A stretch of 64,000 bases of DNA from Podarcis liolepis. Taxonomy: Eukaryota. Under the pieces are notes generated by a model. That model saw nothing but the letters and a program-made list of their open reading frames with translations, did no database searches and was not told the DNA's origin. A program made the translations under genes and the position numbers. Shown here one piece after another: positions 1 through 25,563 of this stretch (the stretch's first letter is position 1; each line of letters opens with the position of its first letter). Location of the stretch: NCBI GenBank assembly GCA_965112155.1, contig OZ218100.1; one strand, written 5' to 3'.

Positions 1-392
1 TTTTTTGCTTTTTGTATAAGTAACATGGTGTCCTCATATGGTGCCATGATTATCCAAGCAACGTTACCTGCCCTCCTTGGTCTTCCCTGGTGTTTCCCTT
101 TGATCACCAGAACTCTGAGGCATGGGAATAGATCAAGTAGCTAGAACTCAGCCCATGATGGAGGGAAGGTCTTGCCTTGCTGGAAGTTGCCAGGCAACCA
201 ATTTTCCTGAGGACCTTGAGCAAAGGAAATTGAGGTGAGCAGCTGGAACTCCCTCATCTTACGAGGGAGGCAAGTCTCCCCTTGCTGGCAAAAAATAAGT
301 CAGAAACAGTAAATTCCATTTGGGTTTCTGCTGGTACAGTTCGACTGGTTGGCAGAAAGCCACTTTTTATTTGTAGGTATTGATATTCAACA

Positions 393-755
393 GGGACGCG
401 GGGGGCGCTGTGGGTAAAACCTCAGCGCCTAGGACTTGCCGATCGCATGGTCGGCGGTTCGAATCCCCGCGGCGGGGTGCGCTCCCGTCGTTCGGTCCCA
501 GCGCCTGCCAACCTAGCCGTTCGAAAGCACCCCCGGGTGCAAGTAGATAAATAGGGACCGCTTACCAGCGGGAAGGTATACGGTGTTTCCGTGTGCTGCG
601 CTGGCTCGCCAGATGCAGCTTGTCACGCTGGCCACGTGACCCGGAAGTGTCTGCGGACAGCGCTGGCTCTCGGCCTATAGAGTGAGATGAGCGCACAACC
701 CTAGAGTCTGGCAAGACTGGCCTGTACAGGCAGGGGTACCTTTACCTTTTACCTT
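393..755 (+). mobile_element. Sauria SINE (Squam1-type, RTE/BovB-mobilised), full length
   Basis: Head GGGACGCGG...GGTTCGAATCC (B box) and (ACCTTT)n tail; 15-bp TSD TATTGATATTCAACA at 378-392 and 756-770; similar to copies at 6563 and 52696. Confidence 0.9.
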
Positions 756-2509
756 TATTGATATTCAACACAAGATTTCCTTGTTCCCTAGCCTCACAAA
801 TATGTTTTTTAATTGTTTATTGTCCGAGTATTGTCTCCATTGCAGCAAGCTTGCATCATGATGCCTCACTTTGAGATGAAAAACACTTTAGTGAAAACTC
901 CATATAGCATGAGACTTGGTAGAATTAAAACATTTGAAGTTTTTCACTTAGTGACTACTGCCATTTTCTGGGAGGCTTGGGTATTATTTATATTAATATT
1001 AACAGTGAGAGGCACTGAAGGTAGGCTAATATTTGTGGCACTATAACATTGCTATTGCTATTTCAATATTGTATTAAGGGCCAATGGCTCATATTTAGAT
1101 CACAGCCAATATTGCTAGGCTGATACAGATGTAAAGGAAGAAACAGTGTCTCTGAAAAGTATGATATAAAAAAGGCAGTAATAAAAGTAGGCAACACTAA
1201 CAGAGCAATCCTGTCCAAGTTTACCCTGTAGTTAATTAGCATTTTGTTCAATGGGGTTTGTTCCCAGGTAAGTGGCATAGCATTTCCACCCAATTATGTC
1301 ATCAGGTGGTGAGAGGAAAAGGTATTATTTTGTTTCTTTATTATTTCTAGCCCACCCTTAATCATAAATGATCTATGGTTAGGGCACAATAAAACATTTA
1401 AAAACCTTAATAATACCATAAAACAAGAGCAGTTAACAAATCAATACCGAGCGCTACCACAGAAATAACTATATCTTAACACAGTCTGGATAGCAATACT
1501 TCACAAATGCCTGAGCAAATAAATGTATCTTCACTTTGCTGGGAACAAAACCAAAGAAGAGAAGGCAGCAGTCATTTCCCAAGAGGGAGGCCATTCCACA
1601 AATGGGGTGTCACCACTGAGAAGGCCTCCCATGTCACCAGGTAAGAAATCTCACCTAGCAGTGGAACATCAAGAAGGCCTCCTCTCAGCTATGATGGGGT
1701 ACATTTCTGGACTATTTTAAAAGCAGAAACTAATGTTGGGAAAGCAAGTCTCCACTTTCAAATATTCATGTCACTGACAGACATTCAAAGATTTCTGAAT
1801 TTGAATTTTGAATCAGATTTGATGACTATCACTTGAGACATTTTTCTAGTTTGGGGATATATCTTCAGTGTTTGGGGGGTCTATATGTATCATTGTTCAA
1901 ATTTTGGTGAAAAGGCCTGAATTTTTGTCCCCACAAATGCATATATATTTAACATTAATTTAGCCCCAAAAGTCCTCAAATCCAGCCCAATCTACTCCAC
2001 ATTGGACATAATATGACATCCGATGTGGACTATGAAATGCCCCCTATGAGAATTCTAGCTATTCCCTCTTTATTTGTAATGTGTAATTGGCACATTCCAG
2101 TGTCAATTAAAAATATTTCTTATTTAGATGCACCTTTCAAAAATGCGCTTACAACTTATGGTATTTATATCCTTCTAACAGTTGCTTGTTGGTTTCAGTA
2201 TTTGCTGTTGGTGGTTGCTCTCTACTTTTTCACTTTTTTCTGTTTGTGTTCGTTCTTTATTTAAGTTAGCTAACTTGGAAGCTCCATTGTGGAGCTAAAT
2301 GGTGTAATACAAAACTTTAATTTGCTGATTTCAGACAATTATTATTTTATTTTATTATTCATTAAGTTTATATACCGCCCTTCATCCAAAGATCACAGGG
2401 CAGTTTACAGCATAATTATCCAGAAGTAACAACTTGAACTGAGCAACTGCATTAATTTTATAATGAATGATTTTAGAGTGTTGTTTATGCTATACTTTTA
2501 TACTGTTTT

Positions 2510-6924: not shown

Positions 6925-7569
6925 ACATTTCTTTTAAGTTTTTATTTTATTGTTTTTAAAATTTTATTATGTATACTACATTGATTAAATGATTTATAAA
7001 TCCAGCGGCAGACTTGGGGGTCTCAAATTTCTGTGGTGCCTTGTGCAATGCTAAAATTTGGCCTGCCCATTCTACATTATTGTTGCACCGACCCTTGCAG
7101 TGCCAGAGCCCAGTGCAACTGAACTGGTAGTGCTACCCTAAAACCGCCTCTGAACAATCATTCTAAATACAAACACATCTTTTCTGAATTATAGAGGATT
7201 AGGCAGAATGGCTGCAATTAGGAACTAGGAAAGCGAGGACACACCCTTTTCCATCCTGGGAGGCCCATTATATATGACAGTTATAAAGCTATTGATGCTG
7301 GATCAAGGTTGGCGCTGTAGGCAGCAATAAGACAGAATTTGCAGCTGTTGCTCCAGAAAAAAACAACGGCCTATAAACCACCTAAGAATCTGTACTTAAA
7401 TATACCAAAAAGAAAACACATCCCTTGGGGAAGTTGCACAACACCCCAGAACGATGTCTTAAATCACGGGAATATTGTTAAGCAATGCAGTTATTAATGT
7501 TATTACAAACGTTCAAAAAACGCAGTGGCAAATGATAAAACAATAACGGGACCTTCCTTTCGTGATGAA

Positions 7570-8460
7570 AATAAAGGAATCGCATTGAGGCAGCACCAGG
7601 CCGAGGCCTGAAAGCCGCATCCTTTGACCCGAAGCGACTGCCTCCGCTCCCGTATAGCGGGGTGGACAGGCTAGGCTGCGATGCCCCGCCGCGCGGAGGG
7701 GCAAAAGCGCTCTGTACGTGCTCAGAGGCGCGGCTCGCCTTTTGGCCCTCCTCGCGTGACACCGAGTGAGAGACCCCGACACGGAGAAGAAGAGGAGGAG
7801 GAGGAGGAGGGGGCCGAGGCGGAGTTGCGGGTGGGGAGGGGGCGGCGAGAGAAAGAGAGAGAAGCAAGTAACATGTTGGGTCATGTGGTTGCGTCACGTG
7901 AAAGGGGAGTCAGGCCCAGCAGCAGCAGCAGCAGGACCGAGAGACAGAGACACAGACAGACTCTGGACTCCGGGCTGGTTGGGGAGGAGCAACGGCAGGC
8001 AGACGGGGCTGGCGGGGCGGAAGCCACACAGGACGAGCTCTAGTGGCTGCCGCCGGCGCTGCCTGTTTAGTCTGCTGCGCCCTGGACGGAGGTAAGGAAT
8101 TGGCCTGTCTGTCTGTGTGTGTGTGTGTGTCCCATTTTCTTTTAACTGCATCCACCCACCCTATTAGCTGCTATGTGGACACTGGATCCCTCTCTCTCTT
8201 TTCTTTCTTCTTCTCTCTCCCCCCTCCTCCAATTGCATTCCCTCCTGGCGGTATGATTCTCCCTTCCCCGCGGGAGGAGGATGCAGGATCTCTGTGTATG
8301 GGCGGGAGAACCTCGTCAGGGCTGATGTTGGTGCCTATAAAATCCTGCCCATCTCCCCTCCATGTCAGATCAGATGCTCCGGCTGCTTGTGAATGTTGAG
8401 GTATTTTATTTGTTTGTTTTTCCTCTCGCGATGGAGCAGGGCTGCTTCTCGCTCGGCAAG
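7570..8460 (+). promoter_or_regulatory. TULP4: CpG island / probable TULP4 promoter
   Basis: Dense CpG and high GC against a CpG-poor background; overlapping half-CRE/E-box TGCGTCACGTG at 7890-7900; GC boxes; followed by a strong splice donor; next recognisable coding sequence on + is TULP4. Confidence 0.7.
7760..8091 (+). other. TULP4: Putative non-coding first exon of TULP4 (5' boundary approximate)
   Basis: GGAG|GTAAGG consensus donor at 8091/8092 at the 3' side of the CpG-dense core; the TSS cannot be placed from sequence. Confidence 0.6.
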
Positions 8461-12945: not shown

Positions 12946-14659
12946 GGTGAGAAACCTAAAGCTGTGGACCAAATATGGCCCCCAGGTCTCTCTCTCTGGC
13001 CCTCAGGACTTTCCCCAGGGGAGGTTCTGTGGCACAAATATAAATCCTTGTGCTGACAGAACTACTTACTTGAATACCACCTATGGGCTCCAGTTCAACC
13101 TGGAAATAAGCTCAGTGAACTCAGTGTGACTTGCTTCTTCTGAGTAGACTTGCCGATGAGTAGATAATGCCCTGAAAATTGTCTTTTCATTTCCATTTCT
13201 GGTTTCTAATGGCCCAATCCAAATAGCTTGCTGTGCCAACAAAACTGAGATACAGTGACTGCTACGCCAGGCCACAGTTCCGACCTGTGGTATGGCACCA
13301 ACCCGAGAAGTTTCAAAATTTCAGTGCTGTTCCAATAAGACCTTTAGTCCAGTGTGGAATAAAAGCACCGCACAAAGCCTTTCAGTTTAGTTTAGTTTAT
13401 TTTCATTTTTGTTTATTATTTACATCCTGCTTTTCTGTAGGAACAATTAAAGTGGCTTACAGTAAAAAGGATTAAAATACATCAAGGCAAGAATAAACAA
13501 AATTAAAACACTAAATCCGCTGTAAGCAGTAAAAATGACAACAGTTGAAAACATTCGGAAGAGAGCAGTTATTAAAAACTCAAATCTCTAGTGTATAGTA
13601 GGTTTAAAACTCTTTGAATAGCAGATCATGCATTAAGAATTAGGTTGAATGTTTATAAAGCACTTCCTAACCACTGAATGACAGGCAGAGAGGGAGCCCA
13701 GCAGGTCTCCACTGAGAGGGCATTCCACAATATTGGTTCCTCACCTAATCTCGCTTATGAACAGGACAGAGGACTGAAGGGGTGGGGAGAGTCAATACTG
13801 GGAATTGCAGTATTTGATAATGTCACATATAGCGATCCTAAGTTAGGAAAGCTGCATGTGCAGGTTGGGTTTACTTCTCCTAGCACACTGTTTTGTAGCT
13901 ACATTTGAGCAAGCTGTCCTTTGTGTTATTGCAATTCAGCATCCTAAAAACGGGTGTCTGATCTTGTTACATTTCAGATTATCTTTTCAACTTTTATTGA
14001 TAGCCCCAAGAGCTAGAAAATTCATTTAAAAGTAAGATGAGAATGCCGTGGCACATAACATATATGGCACCCATATTAAACTGAGAGCTTTTGATCAAAT
14101 AGCTTTTACTTGATTAATATTATCCTTTTTAAACAGACCAGTCATTAATTTGATGTATTAAATATGTATTAAGCAAAACTCAATATCTCAAAGAAAAAAT
14201 AGTTTGGTACTATCTTAAAGGCTAACAAATGTATTATGGCATAAGCACAGGAGCCAACAACATCAGCCATACCACATTTTCTAAACTGGTAATATATGGC
14301 AGGCATGCGGAACAGTTTGCCCGCCAGATGTTGCTAAACTAAAACTCTAATCAGCTGCAGTAAGAATGGCCAGGTATGATGAGAGTTGTAGCTCAGCAAT
14401 ATCTGGATAGCCAGATGTTTCCCAACCTGTTCTATAAAATTATCTCTTTAGGGAAGCTTGCCTGGCACCCATATTTTCCTTTTGGTGCAAGGCCAATGTT
14501 GATCTCTCAGGCTTAAAAAATAATAAAACAATAGCATTTTGAGACCTTGACTTTTCCTGCCTCTGTGGTAGGGGGTGAATGTGTATGCATAACACAGAAA
14601 TAATTTTAAGAGGTGTTTTAATAAATACAAATAATCCATAAATAATCAGTCTTGCTCAT

Positions 14660-16847: not shown

Positions 16848-17138
16848 GTAGAATGATACAATTGTAGAGTTGGAAGGAATCCTGAGGATCATCTAGTCCA
16901 GTGTTTCCCAACCTTGGGCCTCCAGCTGTTTTTGGACTACAACTCCCATCATCCCTCGCTAGCAAGACCAGTGGTCAAGGATGATGGGAATTGTAGTCCA
17001 AAAGCAGCTGGAGGCCCAAGGTTGGGGAACACTGATCTAGTCCAACCCCCTGCAATGCAGGAATATGTAGCTGTCCCATACGGGGACTGAACCTGTGACC
17101 TTGGTGTTATCAGCACCATGCTCTAACCAACTGAGCTA
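16848..17138 (-). mobile_element. tRNA(Ile)-like SINE with CR1-type 3' tail, interrupted by a hAT MITE
   Basis: Minus strand: TAGCTCAGTTGGTTAGAGCATGGTGCTGATAACACCAAGGTCACAGGTTCAGTCCCCGTA head, then GGGGTTGGACTAGATGATCCTCAGG..CCTTCCAACTCTA CR1 tail. Confidence 0.7.
16899..17034. mobile_element. hAT (Buster-type) MITE, 136 bp
   Basis: TIR CAGTGTTTCCCAACC / GGTTGGGGAACACTG (1 mismatch); perfect 8-bp TSD ATCTAGTC (16891-16898, 17035-17042) with central TA. Confidence 0.9.
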
Positions 17139-19869: not shown

Positions 19870-22363
19870 CCCACAAGCCTAAAGTTGCTCCCCCCCACTT
19901 TTTAAAGGATATCCATTGTGCCAAGCAATTTCTCTCTGTAGTTAACATTACTTTTTTAAAAAAACCTACTACAACTACATTCAAATGTATTTCTCTGCAG
20001 AGCAATAACAAATGCATTCTATCCCTTTTGGTATTTCATTAGATTCTCAGAATCAGTGAGTACGTAGTACATCACCTCTCTAGAGGTGTATCAGGCCACT
20101 GTTGTTCTGTAGGAGCACTCAAGCTGTGGGTCAGCTTAATATGAGCTTAGGCAGGGTTGTTGACTTATAAAAAGATGCTTAGTACATGAATTGCTTTTCT
20201 TTTGATGGGAAGCACTGAAACTCGTTGGACTGAAAGACACAGTCTAAAGCCAATGTTCTCGGACAAAGATGCAAAAGAAAGCAGGCTTGCATGTTAGTCC
20301 ATAAACATCATTTTACCAGCCCACATGCCCACATTTATTAGTCATTGACTAGGTGGATTTAAAAGGGGATTAGACAAATTCATGATGGAGAGGGCTATCC
20401 ATGGCTCCAAGCCTTTATGGTTGTGCTCTGCCTCCAGCAATGCTTCTGAATGCCAGTTGGTGGAAGCCACAGGAGGGGAGAGTATTCACCTGCTCAAATC
20501 CTGCTTGCTGGTTTCCCACATGCATCTGGTTGGCCAGTGTGAGAACAGGGTGCTGGACTAGATGAACCATTGACCAGATCCAGCAGGCTTTAAAAAATAC
20601 TGCCTTGCTCTTAATTATAAATAAATCAAAGGGGCTTGCAAGGTTCCCAAAATATATAAAACCTAATAAATACAACAAACCCAAAATATCTGAGGTCAAT
20701 ATTGTATTATAAAACTAAGAGCAGGTTAAAATGATGAGAGTTGTTTGGCAGTGGAACAGTCTATCTACCTCAAGAGGTATAGTGGGTTTTCTGTCGCTGG
20801 AGGTATTCAGGCTGAGGCCAAATCGGTCAGAGGTGCTGTAGTAGCATCCTGCACAACAGATCCTGTGCCAAGCAGAGATTGGTCCAGATGACATCCAAGG
20901 TTACACTCAGCTCTTTGATTTTATGAAAACAATTCCACATAAAAGCAGGGATGCAAAAACTCTAATCTGCATTGACCTGCATCGAATGTGTGAGAGTGCA
21001 GGTTTCTGGGGAGGAGATTGTGGCTGCTTTGCTCTTCCTCTAGTCATTCTGTTGTGAGCTAAGCTATGGTTTGGCTTAATATGCCCTCTGAACCCAGATT
21101 CATGGTTTATATTGCTCTGCCTTTCTGGTTTACAGCTTGTGGTTTGTCAGAGACAGGCTGGTGCAAACCATGGCTTAGTTAACAGCAGCAAGAGCAAAGT
21201 GTCCCTGATCTTCTCTTGAGGAGACTGCATGTCTTCCATGCTCACACTGATGTCTTGGTTTGGCTTAGCATTGTGTGAAAAATGAACTGTTAAATGCTTG
21301 GAGAATGAAAAGCTCTTAAAAGCCCATCTAAAGCTTTCAAAACAGAGAGCCAACCACATCTCTGGATGGCAGGAGTTCCATTCCCTGTGTGCTGTAGTAA
21401 AAAAAGTTGCTCTCACTTATGCAGATTAGAATTTCATTAAAAACAAAGGGAGTATTTTCCAATAGACAGGGCAATAACTACAAAGATGCAATGCCATGAG
21501 AATTCTATTCTGACTAATTAAAAGTTGGTACCTCTTTAATGAGGTATTTTATCTTGTGCAAGAAAAGCAGGTACTTGTCAGTGGTCTAACACAATACAGC
21601 GTGCCAAATCCTAGTATGTTTATTGGTAGAAGGTAATGCAGAAAACTACCATTCTTGGAAAGTGCCAAATGTTGCCAAAATTGTATTTAGTGTTTTTATA
21701 CCCTCAAATCTAGAGCAAAACCCTCTTTTAAAACAAACTTAAAACAAACAAATCAACATATAAATTCTTTTAAAAAAAGACTTACCTAAAATTAGAGGAG
21801 GCCAGAGCAAGATGTTACAAGTTTGAGGGTGGAGTTTGCTCACATCTACTTGAGAGAAAACTGTTTTAATACCAGCTGTACTATCTGGTGTATGTTTTCC
21901 CCGTGAAAGGAACATTCACCCAAGTGTTGGGGGGGGGGGGAAGGCGGAAAAGCTTTCTCCCAAGTGGCATTAGGTACTTAGAGCAGTGTTTCCCAACCTT
22001 TTTTGGGCAAAGGCACACTTGTTTCATGAAAAAAATCTCGAGGCACACCACCATTACAGCCCCGTGACGTCAGCGCGCAGCGTCACACTGGGAGGGACGC
22101 ACGAAAGTGTAAGTTTCAATTTTTTCCCCTCCCCCTTGCCTTCCTTCTGTGCCAACCGCCAAAAAGCCAAGAATCGCGGGACCGCCGGCGGAGGGGGGGA
22201 GGGCGAGCGGAGGCAGCGGCGAGCCCTGTTCCTCCCCATCCGCCCCATTCCGTGCAAGGAGCGCGAACAGGTGTGAGAAGGGGGTCAAACCTGCGGGTCG
22301 GCGCCGGGGAACCTCCAAGCTTTGGGGGTGGGGGGGAGGCAGCAAAGCGAGGCAGGAAGGAGA

Positions 22364-22483
22364 GCGCGGCTTGGCGAAGTACTCGGCGGCGAAGGCCAGC
22401 AGGTCCGGCGGCCGGTGCCGCAGCACCTCCACCGTGTAGCCCTGCAGCAGCTCAGTCAGACCCGGCGGGATCTCGATGCTCAT
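22364..22483 (-). pseudogene. PRKAR2A: Captured 5' coding fragment of cAMP-dependent protein kinase type II regulatory subunit (RII-alpha-like dimerization/docking domain); start of a 137-codon chimeric ORF 22483-22070
   Basis: [40 protein letters not shown] matches the recalled RII N-terminus (human RIIalpha [41 protein letters not shown]); PPG, GYT, PPDL and EYF favour PRKAR2A over PRKAR2B; similarity stops abruptly after codon ~40; no later exons in the window. Confidence 0.85.
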
Positions 22484-22990
22484 CTTGTAGCCGAGGCGCG
22501 CGGGAGACTCAACAGACGGGCCCGGGAGAGAGAGAGAGAGACACGACGGAGAGAGAGCGGGAGTCCCTGCTCGCCGCCGCCGTCGCTACAACTACTGTGG
22601 CGGTTGGTCGTGGCTGTCGCCGCCGCTGCCCACCTCTATCTATCTCTCCCCCTCAGCTTTCTACACGGGCCTGGAGCCGGAGGTGGGGGGTGGCCGCCAC
22701 CGCTTTCTCCGCCTCCACGTCCTGCCTCCTCCTCCTCGAGCCCTCTGTCAGCCCTGAGGGAACCACCGCGCTCGCGCTGCCGCTCTCTGACACGCGAGAA
22801 ATAGAAAGGAACGGAGTGGCGGGGTAGTCGGGGGAAGGAGGGGCCGGAACGGAAGCGCGAGGCGAGCTGCGCATGCCCAGCAGGAAGCGGTGGAGAGCGC
22901 CACAGAGAGAGAGAGAGAGAAGCAAGGGAGGGCGGGGAGTGGGCGGGAACACGCTTCATGCGTCACAATAACGGACAAGGGGCGCTCGAG
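22484..22990 (-). promoter_or_regulatory. Captured CpG-island promoter and 5'UTR upstream of the PRKAR2A-like ATG
   Basis: CpG-dense; ETS-type CCGGAA/CGGAAG 22844-22855, NRF1-like TGCGCATGCC 22868-22877, GC boxes 22930-22946, half-CRE TGCGTCA 22959-22965; Kozak ACAAG-ATG (A at -3). Confidence 0.65.
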
Positions 22991-25563
22991 GGATAGATTA
23001 GGACCTAATTTGACTTTTACCAAAAAAAAAAAAATCTTTTTAATTTTTCCCACGGCACACCAGGCAACATCTCGCGGCACACTAGTGTGCCGCGGAACAG
23101 TGGTTGGGAAACACTGACTTAGAGTAACCTCCTATCTCTCAAGCTTATAGCTTACATCTGCCCACGTTGCTTCATCTAGACAGGCACCTGGGAAAACTCT
23201 GTAACCATTGCCTTAGGTTCTGACCCAGAGCTCTTTCACCCATAGCTTCCCCAAGATTCAAGACTCCTGGCAATATATAGCAGCTTCCAGGAAATCCCTC
23301 GGTAATTAATAATTGCCCTAATTGCCCAATTCTAAATGGCTGGTGAATAATCCTTTCTTGGGCATGTCAAGGTCTATGCTGTGCACCAGCTATCTTGTTC
23401 CAGATGTTATGAAGCAGCATATTGAAGGTTTCAATTGATTTCCCTTACTTTCTTTAGTTCTGTGTTGTTTGCTCCCCCCGCTCCTTATTTCTAGGAAAGC
23501 TATGAAAAAAGGGTACTTTGCTCTTAGGGTCTGCAGCAAGAAATTGTGTTTTTCTGTGTATGTGTTGTACAAAAGCAGAGGCTACAATTGTGTAATGGTC
23601 TATTGTGGAAGGCCCATTCTCTTGCGGTAGGTTGCCCTTTAAAAGGTACTTTGTGTAGCAGGTGGTTTAGGAGATGGTGAGGAGATTCTAAGAAATGGGA
23701 GTTGAAGAGATTCAGAGAAGGAGGCTTGAACATTTGAAAGAGGAAAAGAGAGCTGAGGAGGCGGCAGAGAGAATTAGCCAAAAGAATCATCCAGAGCCTA
23801 ACAGTGCAGGAGAAAAATGAAACCACCTAACCTGGTAGCATTTATCCAGCAGCAGCTTCACCGTCTGGGAGTCTGAATTTTATTGAGATTCATCCCTCCT
23901 TTTTGGATTAAGGTTAAATACTTGCCTTAAATTGTATTTCACCAGAGTTGTTTCCCTTTCTCCCCCCTCCCCCTGCCTCAGCTTATTAAGTAAATCCAGC
24001 TGTTACTTTCCCATTTTAGTGAGTTGACTGCTAGTTTCCTCCTGTATACTTTCTGGAAGTGAAGGGACTGGAAGTGCTGGGTGCTAATTTGGGGCCTTGG
24101 CATTATGTCTCTTTACATAGTTTTGAAGCGAAATACCTAGGATCCATAGATCCCTTGCCCCCAAACAAATTAGTTGCTTGTAGGGAACTTGGGTCATGGC
24201 TGTTTGTTTGTTTGTTTCTACAAATAAATAATAAATTCTCACTGTCACATTCTGCCTTGAATTACCAGATTCTGAACATGCTGTGAGTGGCTGGAATACT
24301 GCCTGGGCAATATGGGGTGCTTCTCCTTTCTCCAGGGTTGGGGATATTTTGTCACTGTTTGTTGTATATCTTCCTTCTGCCATTCCTATGCTCTCTCTCT
24401 TTCCCCCAATCTCTCTTGCTTCAGATGGCAGAATAAAAGTATTCTCTAAACTGAAAGAGATTCCTAATTCAAGGTCCCTTGCCTAGCTTTCTGATAGGGT
24501 CTGCATCTGATAAACCGATGATTCTCTGCTTATGTCTGCATGCCTTTCCTGTCCCCTGCTTTGCACTGGTGATCAGGGATACAATATTCTTTGGCAGGGT
24601 TGCTGCTGCTGTACATTATTGGTTAGCAAAAAGTCTGATTAGCAATGATGGTGCCAGTTGTAGGCTGCCAGCTGTGAAGTAGTCGGGGCTGAAATGCCAT
24701 GTGGGGTTTCATCAGCCACTTTTTATGGCTATGGCTGAGAAACAAGGCTCCTTTTCATTTTATATGAGTAGCAATCCCCTGGAATATGATCCTGGGATAT
24801 TAATGCTGTGCATTAAGTATGATTAGGGAACTCTCCTGTCTTCAACAGTCTCTTGAATTGCTGCGTATTGTTACCGTGCCATTAATGTGATTCATCAGCT
24901 TTGAAACAGCTTGTCCATTGCAAAGGAATTATGTGAATGTATTAACTTTGTAAAGCTTTTTGAAGTTCTGCTGGCAATAATCAATATGAAGCCATGCCCA
25001 AGGCTTTTAAGGCAATTTGGCCATGCTCTTTTCTCTAGACTGAATTGCTTTTTCCCATGGAAGTATTAGTGAAGAGATAAGAAGTGATAACGTTATTGCA
25101 TTTAGCGGGTGACAAGAGTGCCAGCTGCACAGCAGTAATGCAATAGCGTAGATGCAAAGTCCTCAACATCAACAGGTGTGTATGTTTCCCCTTCACATAG
25201 GGCTTAGAAAGCATGGAAATTCTTCACCACTCGCCTACTATTCACCCATGGAACAATTCCTGAGAAATCATTTGACATCTTTCACCACCACGGTTGCATT
25301 CATATCTTTTCCCTGTTGGTGTCTTGCAGTGTAATTGTTTCTCCAGTTTTTAGGAAATGTTAGTGCTTTGGACACAACTGCAGAACAAAGCTTTCAGATG
25401 GGAGCACACTACTATTTCTTCGAGTCTTGAGGTGCAGCTTTTGATGTGGCCGGTGACAGCATGCAACCCTGCTTCTTTGTCATCTCCCAGCGCTTCTATC
25501 AGTGCCTTCCCCACCCTCTGTTCAACTTGCCAGTGGTGTGTGTGGCAGGTGGGGAGGGAGGTA

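What the first reader, a model, noticed from the sequence alone, without database searches (positions are those of the whole stretch)
21984..23116. Pack-hAT: a transposase-less hAT transposon that has captured the promoter, 5'UTR and D/D-domain coding start of PRKAR2A
Seen: perfect 15-bp TIRs and a perfect 8-bp TSD (ACTTAGAG, central TA) bracket 1133 bp. The interior is not transposase but a CpG island containing the first ~40 codons of a PKA RII subunit with ~500 bp of contiguous upstream sequence. Established: an 8-bp nnnTAnnn TSD with CAG..CTG ends marks Buster/Charlie hATs. Gene-fragment capture (Pack-MULE, Pack-TYPE, Pack-TIR) is common in plants, favours GC-rich 5' gene ends, and is rarely reported in vertebrates. 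Inference: capture happened at the DNA level, since promoter motifs are included and there are no downstream exons or poly(A). The insertion is recent, given the undecayed TIR, TSD and CpGs. If multicopy, this is a mobile CpG-island promoter plus PKA-docking-domain cassette in a lizard genome.
Basis: partly seen in the sequence, partly recalled or inferred. Interest (0 to 1): 0.95.

Follow-up and report, generated by a model that had tools for sequence, protein, structure and literature searches.

The report
Lizard hAT transposon carrying PRKAR2A promoter
A 1.1-kb cut-and-paste (hAT) transposon with no transposase gene carries the copied promoter and first ~40 codons of the protein kinase A regulatory gene PRKAR2A, and protein models show several copies in wall lizards, a rare but already described kind of element in vertebrates.

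Summary
Perfect 15-bp terminal inverted repeats (21984-21998 / 23102-23116) and a perfect 8-bp target-site duplication, ACTTAGAG, bracket 1,133 bp. A 136-bp MITE with the same ends lies 5 kb away.

The interior (22059-22990) is a 932-bp CpG island: GC 67%, CpG o/e 0.88, against 0.08-0.13 in the flanks. On the minus strand it holds a start codon and the first 37-40 codons of a PKA RII-alpha docking/dimerisation domain (Pfam RIIa, E 1e-14), with 507 bp of upstream sequence. This is joined to a second GC-rich fragment of unknown source.

Five Podarcis muralis protein models share the same truncated N-terminus, the same non-PRKAR2A junction residues (KPRSPS) and the same translated 5'UTR. They differ by substitutions, indels and downstream sequence. 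The scan also noted a 1,139-bp twin elsewhere in this genome (s1-845168). The cargo was therefore captured once and then amplified.

It is a multicopy Pack-hAT, a new member of a known but rare vertebrate class. Tan et al. 2021 found 4 multicopy cases in 100 animal genomes.

The parts
21976..21983 (.). Left copy of the 8-bp target-site duplication ACTTAGAG (central TA)
   Evidence: Read directly; identical to 23117-23124.
21984..21998 (+). Left 15-bp TIR CAGTGTTTCCCAACC (terminal CAGTG fits the hAT motif YARNG)
   Evidence: (I4, 100% complementary).
21984..22058 (+). Left transposon backbone, AT-rich (GC 43%), with subterminal GGCACAC motifs at 22012 and 22042
   Evidence: 5 of the window's 8 GGCACAC/GTGTGCC sites lie in the two ends of the element. 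The composition break is seen.
22059..22363 (.). Second GC-rich cargo fragment of unknown source (GC 66%, CpG o/e 0.83). It has a perfect CRE palindrome TGACGTCA at 22065-22072 and donor-like sites on the + strand (GTAAGT at 22108; CAG|GTGTGAG near 22269)
   Evidence: Its translation matches only P0001, another copy. The scan's by-sequence look-up was blank. The promoter/first-exon reading is inference.
22364..22483 (-). PRKAR2A-derived coding start: ATG at 22483 and 37-40 codons of the RII-alpha docking/dimerisation domain. Canonical sauropsid sequence continues RLRDAR, whereas here it reads KPRSPS
22484..22990 (-). 5'UTR and CpG-island promoter region contiguous with the ATG (GC 67%, 51 CpG, o/e 0.91), with GC boxes, ETS-like CTTCCG, an NRF1-like GCGCATGC and two (GA)n tracts
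   Evidence: In-frame translations of this stretch recur in P0002-P0005.
22991..23116 (+). Right transposon backbone (GC 43%) with an A13 run and GGCACAC motifs at 23054, 23076 and 23085(-), including the palindrome CGCGGCACACT/AGTGTGCCGCG
   Evidence: (I12, I14).
23102..23116 (-). Right 15-bp TIR (reverse complement of the left one)
23117..23124 (.). Right copy of the TSD ACTTAGAG
22070..22483 (-). Open 137-codon chimeric ORF (RIIa fragment, then antisense of cargo 2, then backbone). It is probably fortuitous
   Evidence: P0001 is 94% identical over its full length. In 66% GC DNA, roughly a 10% chance per frame of 97 stop-free codons (own estimate).
16891..17042 (+). Sibling 136-bp hAT MITE (16899-17034) with the same TIR (one mismatch in the right arm), its own TSD ATCTAGTC and a different interior

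Best explanation
This is a non-autonomous hAT transposon of the Buster/Charlie type. Its interior was replaced by copied host DNA, which makes it a Pack-hAT. About 75 bp (left) and 125 bp (right) of transposon backbone keep the TIRs and the repeated subterminal GGCACAC motifs, which are likely transposase-binding sites. Between them lie about 630 bp copied from the PRKAR2A CpG island (promoter, 5'UTR, ATG to about codon 40, minus strand) and about 300 bp of a second GC-rich fragment. Shown: the structure, the identity of the cargo, and the existence of several diverged copies that share one capture junction in Podarcis. Inferred: the cargo was copied at the DNA level by template switching, either during gap repair after excision or at a stalled replication fork (the FoSTeST model of Tan et al. 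2021). The chimera was then moved in trans by an autonomous hAT with matching ends, and this copy inserted recently at ACTTAGAG. The result is a promoter-like CpG island with a start codon spread to new loci. Function of the copies is unproven, and differences between copies look like neutral CpG decay.
For: TIR, TSD and their non-random occurrence. The terminal CAGTG fits the hAT motif YARNG with an 8-bp TSD (PMC3014272). The TSDs ACTTAGAG and ATCTAGTC fit the Buster consensus nnnTAnnn (PMC3499496; PMC3517528). A second element in the window has the same TIR. CpG-island cargo. RII-alpha D/D start. Multicopy with a shared junction: P0001 (138 aa, 94% identical, full length) and P0002-P0005 all have ...[14 protein letters not shown] and translated 5'UTR, yet differ by T17M, indels in the (CT)n tract, 360-400 bp gaps and unrelated tails absent from this window. 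Canonical squamate RII-alpha instead reads EYF[SC]RLRD[AT]R (Gekko P0007, Varanus P0008, Lerista P0043). Scan note s1-845168 reports a 1,139-bp twin on another piece of this genome (unchecked). Precedent: 208 of 370 animal Pack-TIRs are hAT, and the multicopy ones favour GC-rich cargo and 5' gene ends. TcBuster favours TSSs and CpG islands. Lizard non-autonomous hATs often take up extraneous DNA.
Against: No DNA of any other copy could be read, so different TSDs, the direct proof of transposition after capture, were not seen. The parent PRKAR2A locus of Podarcis was not retrieved (one search found no Podarcis fragment in the allowed length range), so breakpoints and microhomology are unknown. 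No autonomous partner and no cargo-less version of this backbone is in the window. The P. muralis models are automatic annotations, and their odd tails and gaps could partly be alignment artefacts.
Confidence: 0.85

Rival explanations
1. Composite (two-element) mobilisation. Two separate hAT MITE insertions landed on either side of the PRKAR2A 5' region, since Buster-type hATs favour TSSs. The transposase then used the two outer ends and moved the DNA in between as one unit. No template switching is needed.
For: The left and right backbones are unlike each other beyond the TIR. TcBuster prefers TSSs and CpG islands. MITEs with this TIR are present nearby.
Against: There are no internal TIRs, even at 3 mismatches. 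The cargo is a mosaic of two fragments that do not read as one contiguous locus: the PRKAR2A coding sequence stops mid-exon at codon 37-40 and abuts unrelated GC-rich DNA.
Confidence: 0.08
2. Single-copy, transposition-independent gap filling. A resident hAT was broken and repaired with PRKAR2A sequence in place, as in most animal Pack-TIRs, and never moved afterwards.
For: This is the commonest origin of animal Pack-TIRs; only 1.4% are multicopy.
Against: At least five further distinct sequences carry the same junction in P. muralis, and the scan noted a twin in this genome. Perfect TIRs and a perfect TSD point to a young insertion of the already chimeric element.
Confidence: 0.04
3. Assembly artefact or segmental duplication. 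Either the PRKAR2A 5' end was mis-joined between two MITE halves, or the copies arose by duplication of larger blocks.
For: GC-rich repeats are hard to assemble. The best run holds only 0.72 of the sampled words.
Against: A perfect 8-bp TSD directly abuts perfect TIRs. The same chimeric ORF, including cargo 2 and backbone, exists independently in the P. muralis annotation (P0001). Runs of seven coded organisms hold parts of the stretch.
Confidence: 0.03

Closest known systems
Multicopy Pack-hAT elements of vertebrates, e.g. Pack-hAT-N8_XT of Xenopus tropicalis carrying 291 bp of the CAPSL 5'UTR (Tan et al. 2021, PMC8277862)
   Same: A non-autonomous hAT backbone, a GC-rich cargo from the 5' end of a host gene, and amplification to several loci. 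The paper reports that Pack-TIRs are often transcribed as chimeras.
   Different: This one is in a squamate; the paper text mentions no lizard. The cargo is larger and mosaic (about 930 bp): a whole CpG-island promoter, the start codon, most of a protein domain, and a second fragment. At least 6 sequence variants are seen here, against 3 copies in the frog example. Distinct TSDs were not verified here.
Pack-MULE / Pack-TYPE elements of plants
   Same: TIR transposons that transduplicate gene fragments, prefer GC-rich 5' gene ends, are often mosaic and are often multicopy.
   Different: A different superfamily (hAT, 8-bp TSD, against Mutator, 9-11 bp TSD) and an animal host.
Non-autonomous hAT families of Anolis carolinensis (hAT-HT1N/HT2N, hobo-N; Novick et al. 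2011, PMC3014272)
   Same: Charlie-related ends of the form CAGnG....CCAAC(C)T, TSDs like NTCTAGAN, young age, and frequent uptake of extraneous genomic DNA.
   Different: The filler reported in Anolis is mostly anonymous DNA and TE fragments, not a gene promoter with a coding start. The TIR here matches none of the TIRs shown in the part of that paper's table that I read, and the TIR string occurs in no paper of the library.

Membership tests
hAT superfamily (non-autonomous member) | 8-bp target-site duplication | tested here: met
   ACTTAGAG on both sides. The sibling MITE has ATCTAGTC.
hAT superfamily (non-autonomous member) | Short TIRs (about 10-25 bp) with the terminal motif YARNG | tested here: met
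   15-bp perfect TIR starting CAGTG. The motif is as given in PMC3014272.
hAT superfamily (non-autonomous member) | Mobilised by a hAT transposase (BED / RNase-H-like / hATC dimerisation domains) encoded by an autonomous relative with the same ends | not testable with these tools
   No transposase ORF in the element. Ten other ORFs of the window have no Pfam hit. No lizard genome could be searched.
Buster/Charlie clade of hAT | TSD consensus nnnTAnnn | tested here: met
   ACT-TA-GAG and ATC-TA-GTC. The consensus is from PMC3499496 and PMC3517528. With only two sites this is suggestive, not conclusive.
Buster/Charlie clade of hAT | Transposase groups with Buster in a phylogeny | not testable with these tools
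   No autonomous copy is available.
Pack-TIR / Pack-hAT (Tan et al. 2021 criteria) | TIR-transposon ends enclose sequence that is not transposon-derived but copied from a host gene | tested here: met
   RIIa domain start and CpG-island composition between hAT ends.
Pack-TIR / Pack-hAT (Tan et al. 2021 criteria) | A parental copy exists elsewhere that is not associated with the transposon | tested here: inconclusive
   Canonical RII-alpha exon 1 of other sauropsids continues RLRDAR..., unlike the cargo. The PRKAR2A locus of Podarcis itself was not retrieved (look-up of encoding contigs closed).
Multicopy Pack-TIR | Several copies with the same cargo and junctions | tested here: met
   P0001-P0005 share the junction KPRSPS and the 5'UTR translation but are five different sequences. 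This is protein-level evidence only.
Multicopy Pack-TIR | Copies flanked by different TSDs (transposition after capture) | not testable with these tools
MITE | Very short (below about 800 bp) and non-coding | tested here: not met
   1,133 bp with gene-derived cargo. The 136-bp sibling at 16899-17034 does qualify.

The most novel reading that the evidence does not exclude
Wall-lizard (lacertid) genomes may be a vertebrate hot spot of ongoing Pack-hAT formation. One hAT lineage would have repeatedly captured CpG-island promoters with first exons, PRKAR2A being one of several cargoes; the scan lists at least 9 such notes in this genome. The dispersed copies would act as mobile promoters and first exons that start chimeric transcripts at new loci. 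The five P. muralis gene models with different tails would be their trace. If so, young, possibly polymorphic copies across the many Podarcis assemblies would allow the capture mechanism (FoSTeST or gap filling) to be reconstructed step by step in a vertebrate.
Probability: 0.3. Interest if true: 0.75.

Novelty: new member of a known kind. Interest (0 to 1): 0.55.

Why it matters
Gene-fragment capture by DNA transposons is a major source of exon and promoter shuffling in plants, but it is thought to be marginal in vertebrates. Only four multicopy cases were found in 100 animal genomes. A young, multicopy lizard element that spreads a complete CpG-island promoter, a start codon and most of a PKA-anchoring domain is a clear additional case. 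It also sits in a genus with many sequenced species. That makes it possible to test how such elements arise, whether they seed new promoters and chimeric genes, and whether transposed CpG islands stay unmethylated.

Tried and rejected
Local scripts did read the whole window file for composition and as a BLAST subject.

3. Exact-pattern scans with the element's ends found nothing in metagenome contigs or viral contigs. No lizard genome collection is on hand.

5. The translation of cargo 2 matched only P0001, so its source remains unknown.

6. A search for the Podarcis parent exon 1, using the non-D/D part of P0012, gave no Podarcis hit. It showed that P0010 and P0012, which I first took for lizard sequences, are probably avian: they are 100% identical to a Hirundo rustica protein over the aligned part.

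7. Local BLAST found no further copy of the backbone in the window.

8. Rejected, retrocopy origin: 507 bp of promoter-like sequence lie upstream of the ATG, there are no downstream exons, and there is no poly(A) at the 3' end of the fragment. The A13 run lies on the other side, in the backbone.

9. Rejected, RII-beta as the source: 49.7 bits against 59.9 for RII-alpha, and every named sauropsid hit is II-alpha.

10. Not claimed, selection on the 137-codon ORF: open frames are expected in 66% GC DNA.
Full report
**Observation**

- CAGTGTTTCCCAACC at 21984-21998 is perfectly complementary to 23102-23116.
- The octamer ACTTAGAG directly abuts both ends, at 21976-21983 and 23117-23124.
- A scan of the whole window for an 11-bp perfect YARNG-type TIR with an 8-bp TSD (at most 1 mismatch) returned only this element. 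It returned none in 20 Markov shuffles.
- The TIR with up to 3 mismatches occurs 9 times in the window against 1.98 expected, and 0 of 100 shuffles reached that.
- One of those hits is a complete 136-bp MITE at 16899-17034. It has the same TIR, its own TSD ATCTAGTC and a different interior. The ends therefore belong to a real hAT lineage active in this genome.

**Anatomy**

- The two ends (21984-22058 and 22991-23116) are AT-rich (GC 43%). They hold 5 of the window's 8 GGCACAC/GTGTGCC motifs. Such subterminal repeats are typical of hAT transposase-binding regions; this point is my own knowledge and an inference.
- Between the ends lies a 932-bp CpG island (22059-22990): GC 66.7%, 91 CpG, o/e 0.88. 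The flanks have o/e 0.08 and 0.13, and the window average is 0.30.
- On the minus strand an ATG at 22483 opens a 137-codon ORF.
- Residues 1-38 of that ORF match the Pfam RIIa domain (PF02197, E 1e-14).
- They also match solved D/D domains of PKA RII-alpha (E 6.8e-16, 59.9 bits), with RII-beta lower at 49.7 bits.
- Squamate RII-alpha models (Gekko P0007, Varanus P0008, Lerista P0043) continue EYF[SC]RLRD[AT]R. The element reads [10 protein letters not shown]. PRKAR2A homology therefore ends at codon 37-40 (22364-22372).
- Upstream of the ATG lie 507 bp of GC-rich sequence with GC boxes and with ETS-like, NRF1-like and CRE-like motifs (the motif reading is mine).
- The remaining 300 bp (22059-22363) are a second GC-rich fragment. 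It has a perfect CRE (TGACGTCA, 22065-22072) and donor-like sites on the + strand. Its translation matches nothing but another copy of the element.
- If that fragment is also a promoter with a first exon (inference), the two fragments point towards each other.

**Multicopy evidence**

- P0001 (138 aa) is 94% identical over the full chimeric ORF, including cargo 2 and backbone.
- P0002-P0005 (78-96 aa) share the RIIa start, the non-PRKAR2A junction residues KPRSPS and in-frame translations of the 5'UTR/promoter.
- They differ among themselves in several ways:
  - T17M in P0003 and P0005.
  - A frameshift or a two-residue deletion in the (CT)n tract (P0005, P0004).
  - Gaps of about 360-400 bp relative to this copy in P0002 and P0005. 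In the window's sequence these gaps have GC...AG boundaries, so they may be deletions or mis-modelled introns.
  - Four unrelated tails after KPRSPS. None of them is encoded anywhere in this window.
- A shared, non-parental junction with diverged sequence means one capture event followed by multiplication.
- The scan's own notes list a 1,139-bp 'Pack-hAT B' with the same cargo on another piece of this genome (s1-845168). They also list at least nine other 'Pack-type hAT with CpG island' notes. These are unchecked AI notes and count only as leads.
- Runs of seven coded organisms hold 0.43-0.72 of the sampled words of window 21300-23800, consistent with a group of closely related species.
- The window's species is probably a Podarcis but not necessarily P. 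muralis. No P. muralis model is identical to the window ORF.

**Age and state**

- Perfect TIRs and a perfect TSD point to a recent insertion.
- The window ORF and P0001 differ by 7 substitutions and one in-frame codon over 137 codons. That is roughly 2-3% at the DNA level, by my estimate.
- Four of the seven substitutions are CpG transitions. T17M, seen in two other copies, is one as well.
- This suggests that the copies are or were methylated and are decaying neutrally. The high CpG content would then reflect youth, not protection as an active island. The sample is small.
- The open 137-codon frame is not strong evidence of function, because stop-free frames are common in 66% GC DNA.

**Mechanism**

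- Shown: a transposase-less hAT with intact ends carries PRKAR2A 5' sequence and exists in several diverged copies.
- Inferred: the cargo was copied as DNA. It includes promoter sequence, has no downstream exons and has no poly(A) at its 3' end.
- The copying was probably by template switching during gap repair or at a stalled replication fork (FoSTeST, PMC8277862). It used two GC-rich, probably open-chromatin templates.
- The chimera was then moved in trans.
- Buster-type hATs favour TSSs and CpG islands. This would bring such elements near promoters.
- Composite mobilisation by two flanking MITEs is a weaker alternative, because there are no internal TIRs and the cargo is a mosaic.

**Comparison with what is known**

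- The ends and TSDs fit hAT (8-bp TSD, YARNG) and the Buster consensus nnnTAnnn.
- Tan et al. 2021 found 370 Pack-TIRs in 100 animal genomes. Of these, 208 were hAT and only four were multicopy: three in Xenopus and one in alligator. One was a 5'UTR capture by hAT-N8_XT. The multicopy ones favoured GC-rich cargo.
- Novick et al. 2011 showed that Anolis non-autonomous hATs readily take up extraneous DNA.
- No paper in the library holds this TIR string or links PRKAR2A with a lizard hAT.
- I therefore file this as a new member of a known but rare kind.

**Limits**

- As a result, the TSDs of other copies, the parent locus, orthologous empty sites, copy number and expression remain untested.
- Six small, possibly RNA, contig sets of one organism hold about 0.19 of the words, but they could not be placed on the sequence.

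Noticed in passing
window 16891-17042: A 136-bp palindromic hAT MITE (16899-17034) with the same TIR as the Pack element (right arm CAGTGTTCCCCAACC, one mismatch) and TSD ATCTAGTC. Its interior differs (…GGACTACAACTCCCATCATCCC…).
   Followed up: partly
window 378-770: A CpG-rich tRNA-like SINE insertion (body 393-755) flanked by a perfect 15-bp TSD, TATTGATATTCAACA (378-392 and 756-770). It looks like a young squamate SINE copy.
   Followed up: no
window 7560-8095: A host-type CpG island with an E-box/CRE-like GTCACGTGA and a consensus splice donor (GGAG|GTAAGG near 8091) on the + strand. It is probably the promoter and first exon of a host gene, which would put the Pack-hAT about 14 kb downstream, possibly in intron 1. 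The gene was not identified; 10 large ORFs of the window have no Pfam hit.
   Followed up: partly
P0002 and P0005 (Podarcis muralis models) against window 22478-22943: Both models start right after the same in-frame stop (SVFP..., window 22955). They then skip about 397 bp (P0002) or about 359 bp (P0005) of the promoter/5'UTR. In the window's sequence the skipped parts have GC...AG boundaries. These could be deletion derivatives or semi-canonical introns and are unresolved.
   Followed up: partly
P0005 tail after KPRSPS: The tail begins W-E-T-H, which is compatible with TGGGAAACAC, the inner 10 nt of the element's TIR. That copy may join the PRKAR2A fragment directly to a TIR remnant, lacking cargo 2 and the left backbone. 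This is inferred from amino acids only.
   Followed up: no
window 14413-14427: The TIR-like site AGATGTTTCCCAACC (3 mismatches to the TIR). It may be the end of a related hAT family or chance.
   Followed up: no
window 21300-23800: Six small contig sets guessed to be RNA, all from one coded organism (G), hold 0.18-0.20 of the sampled words.
   Followed up: no
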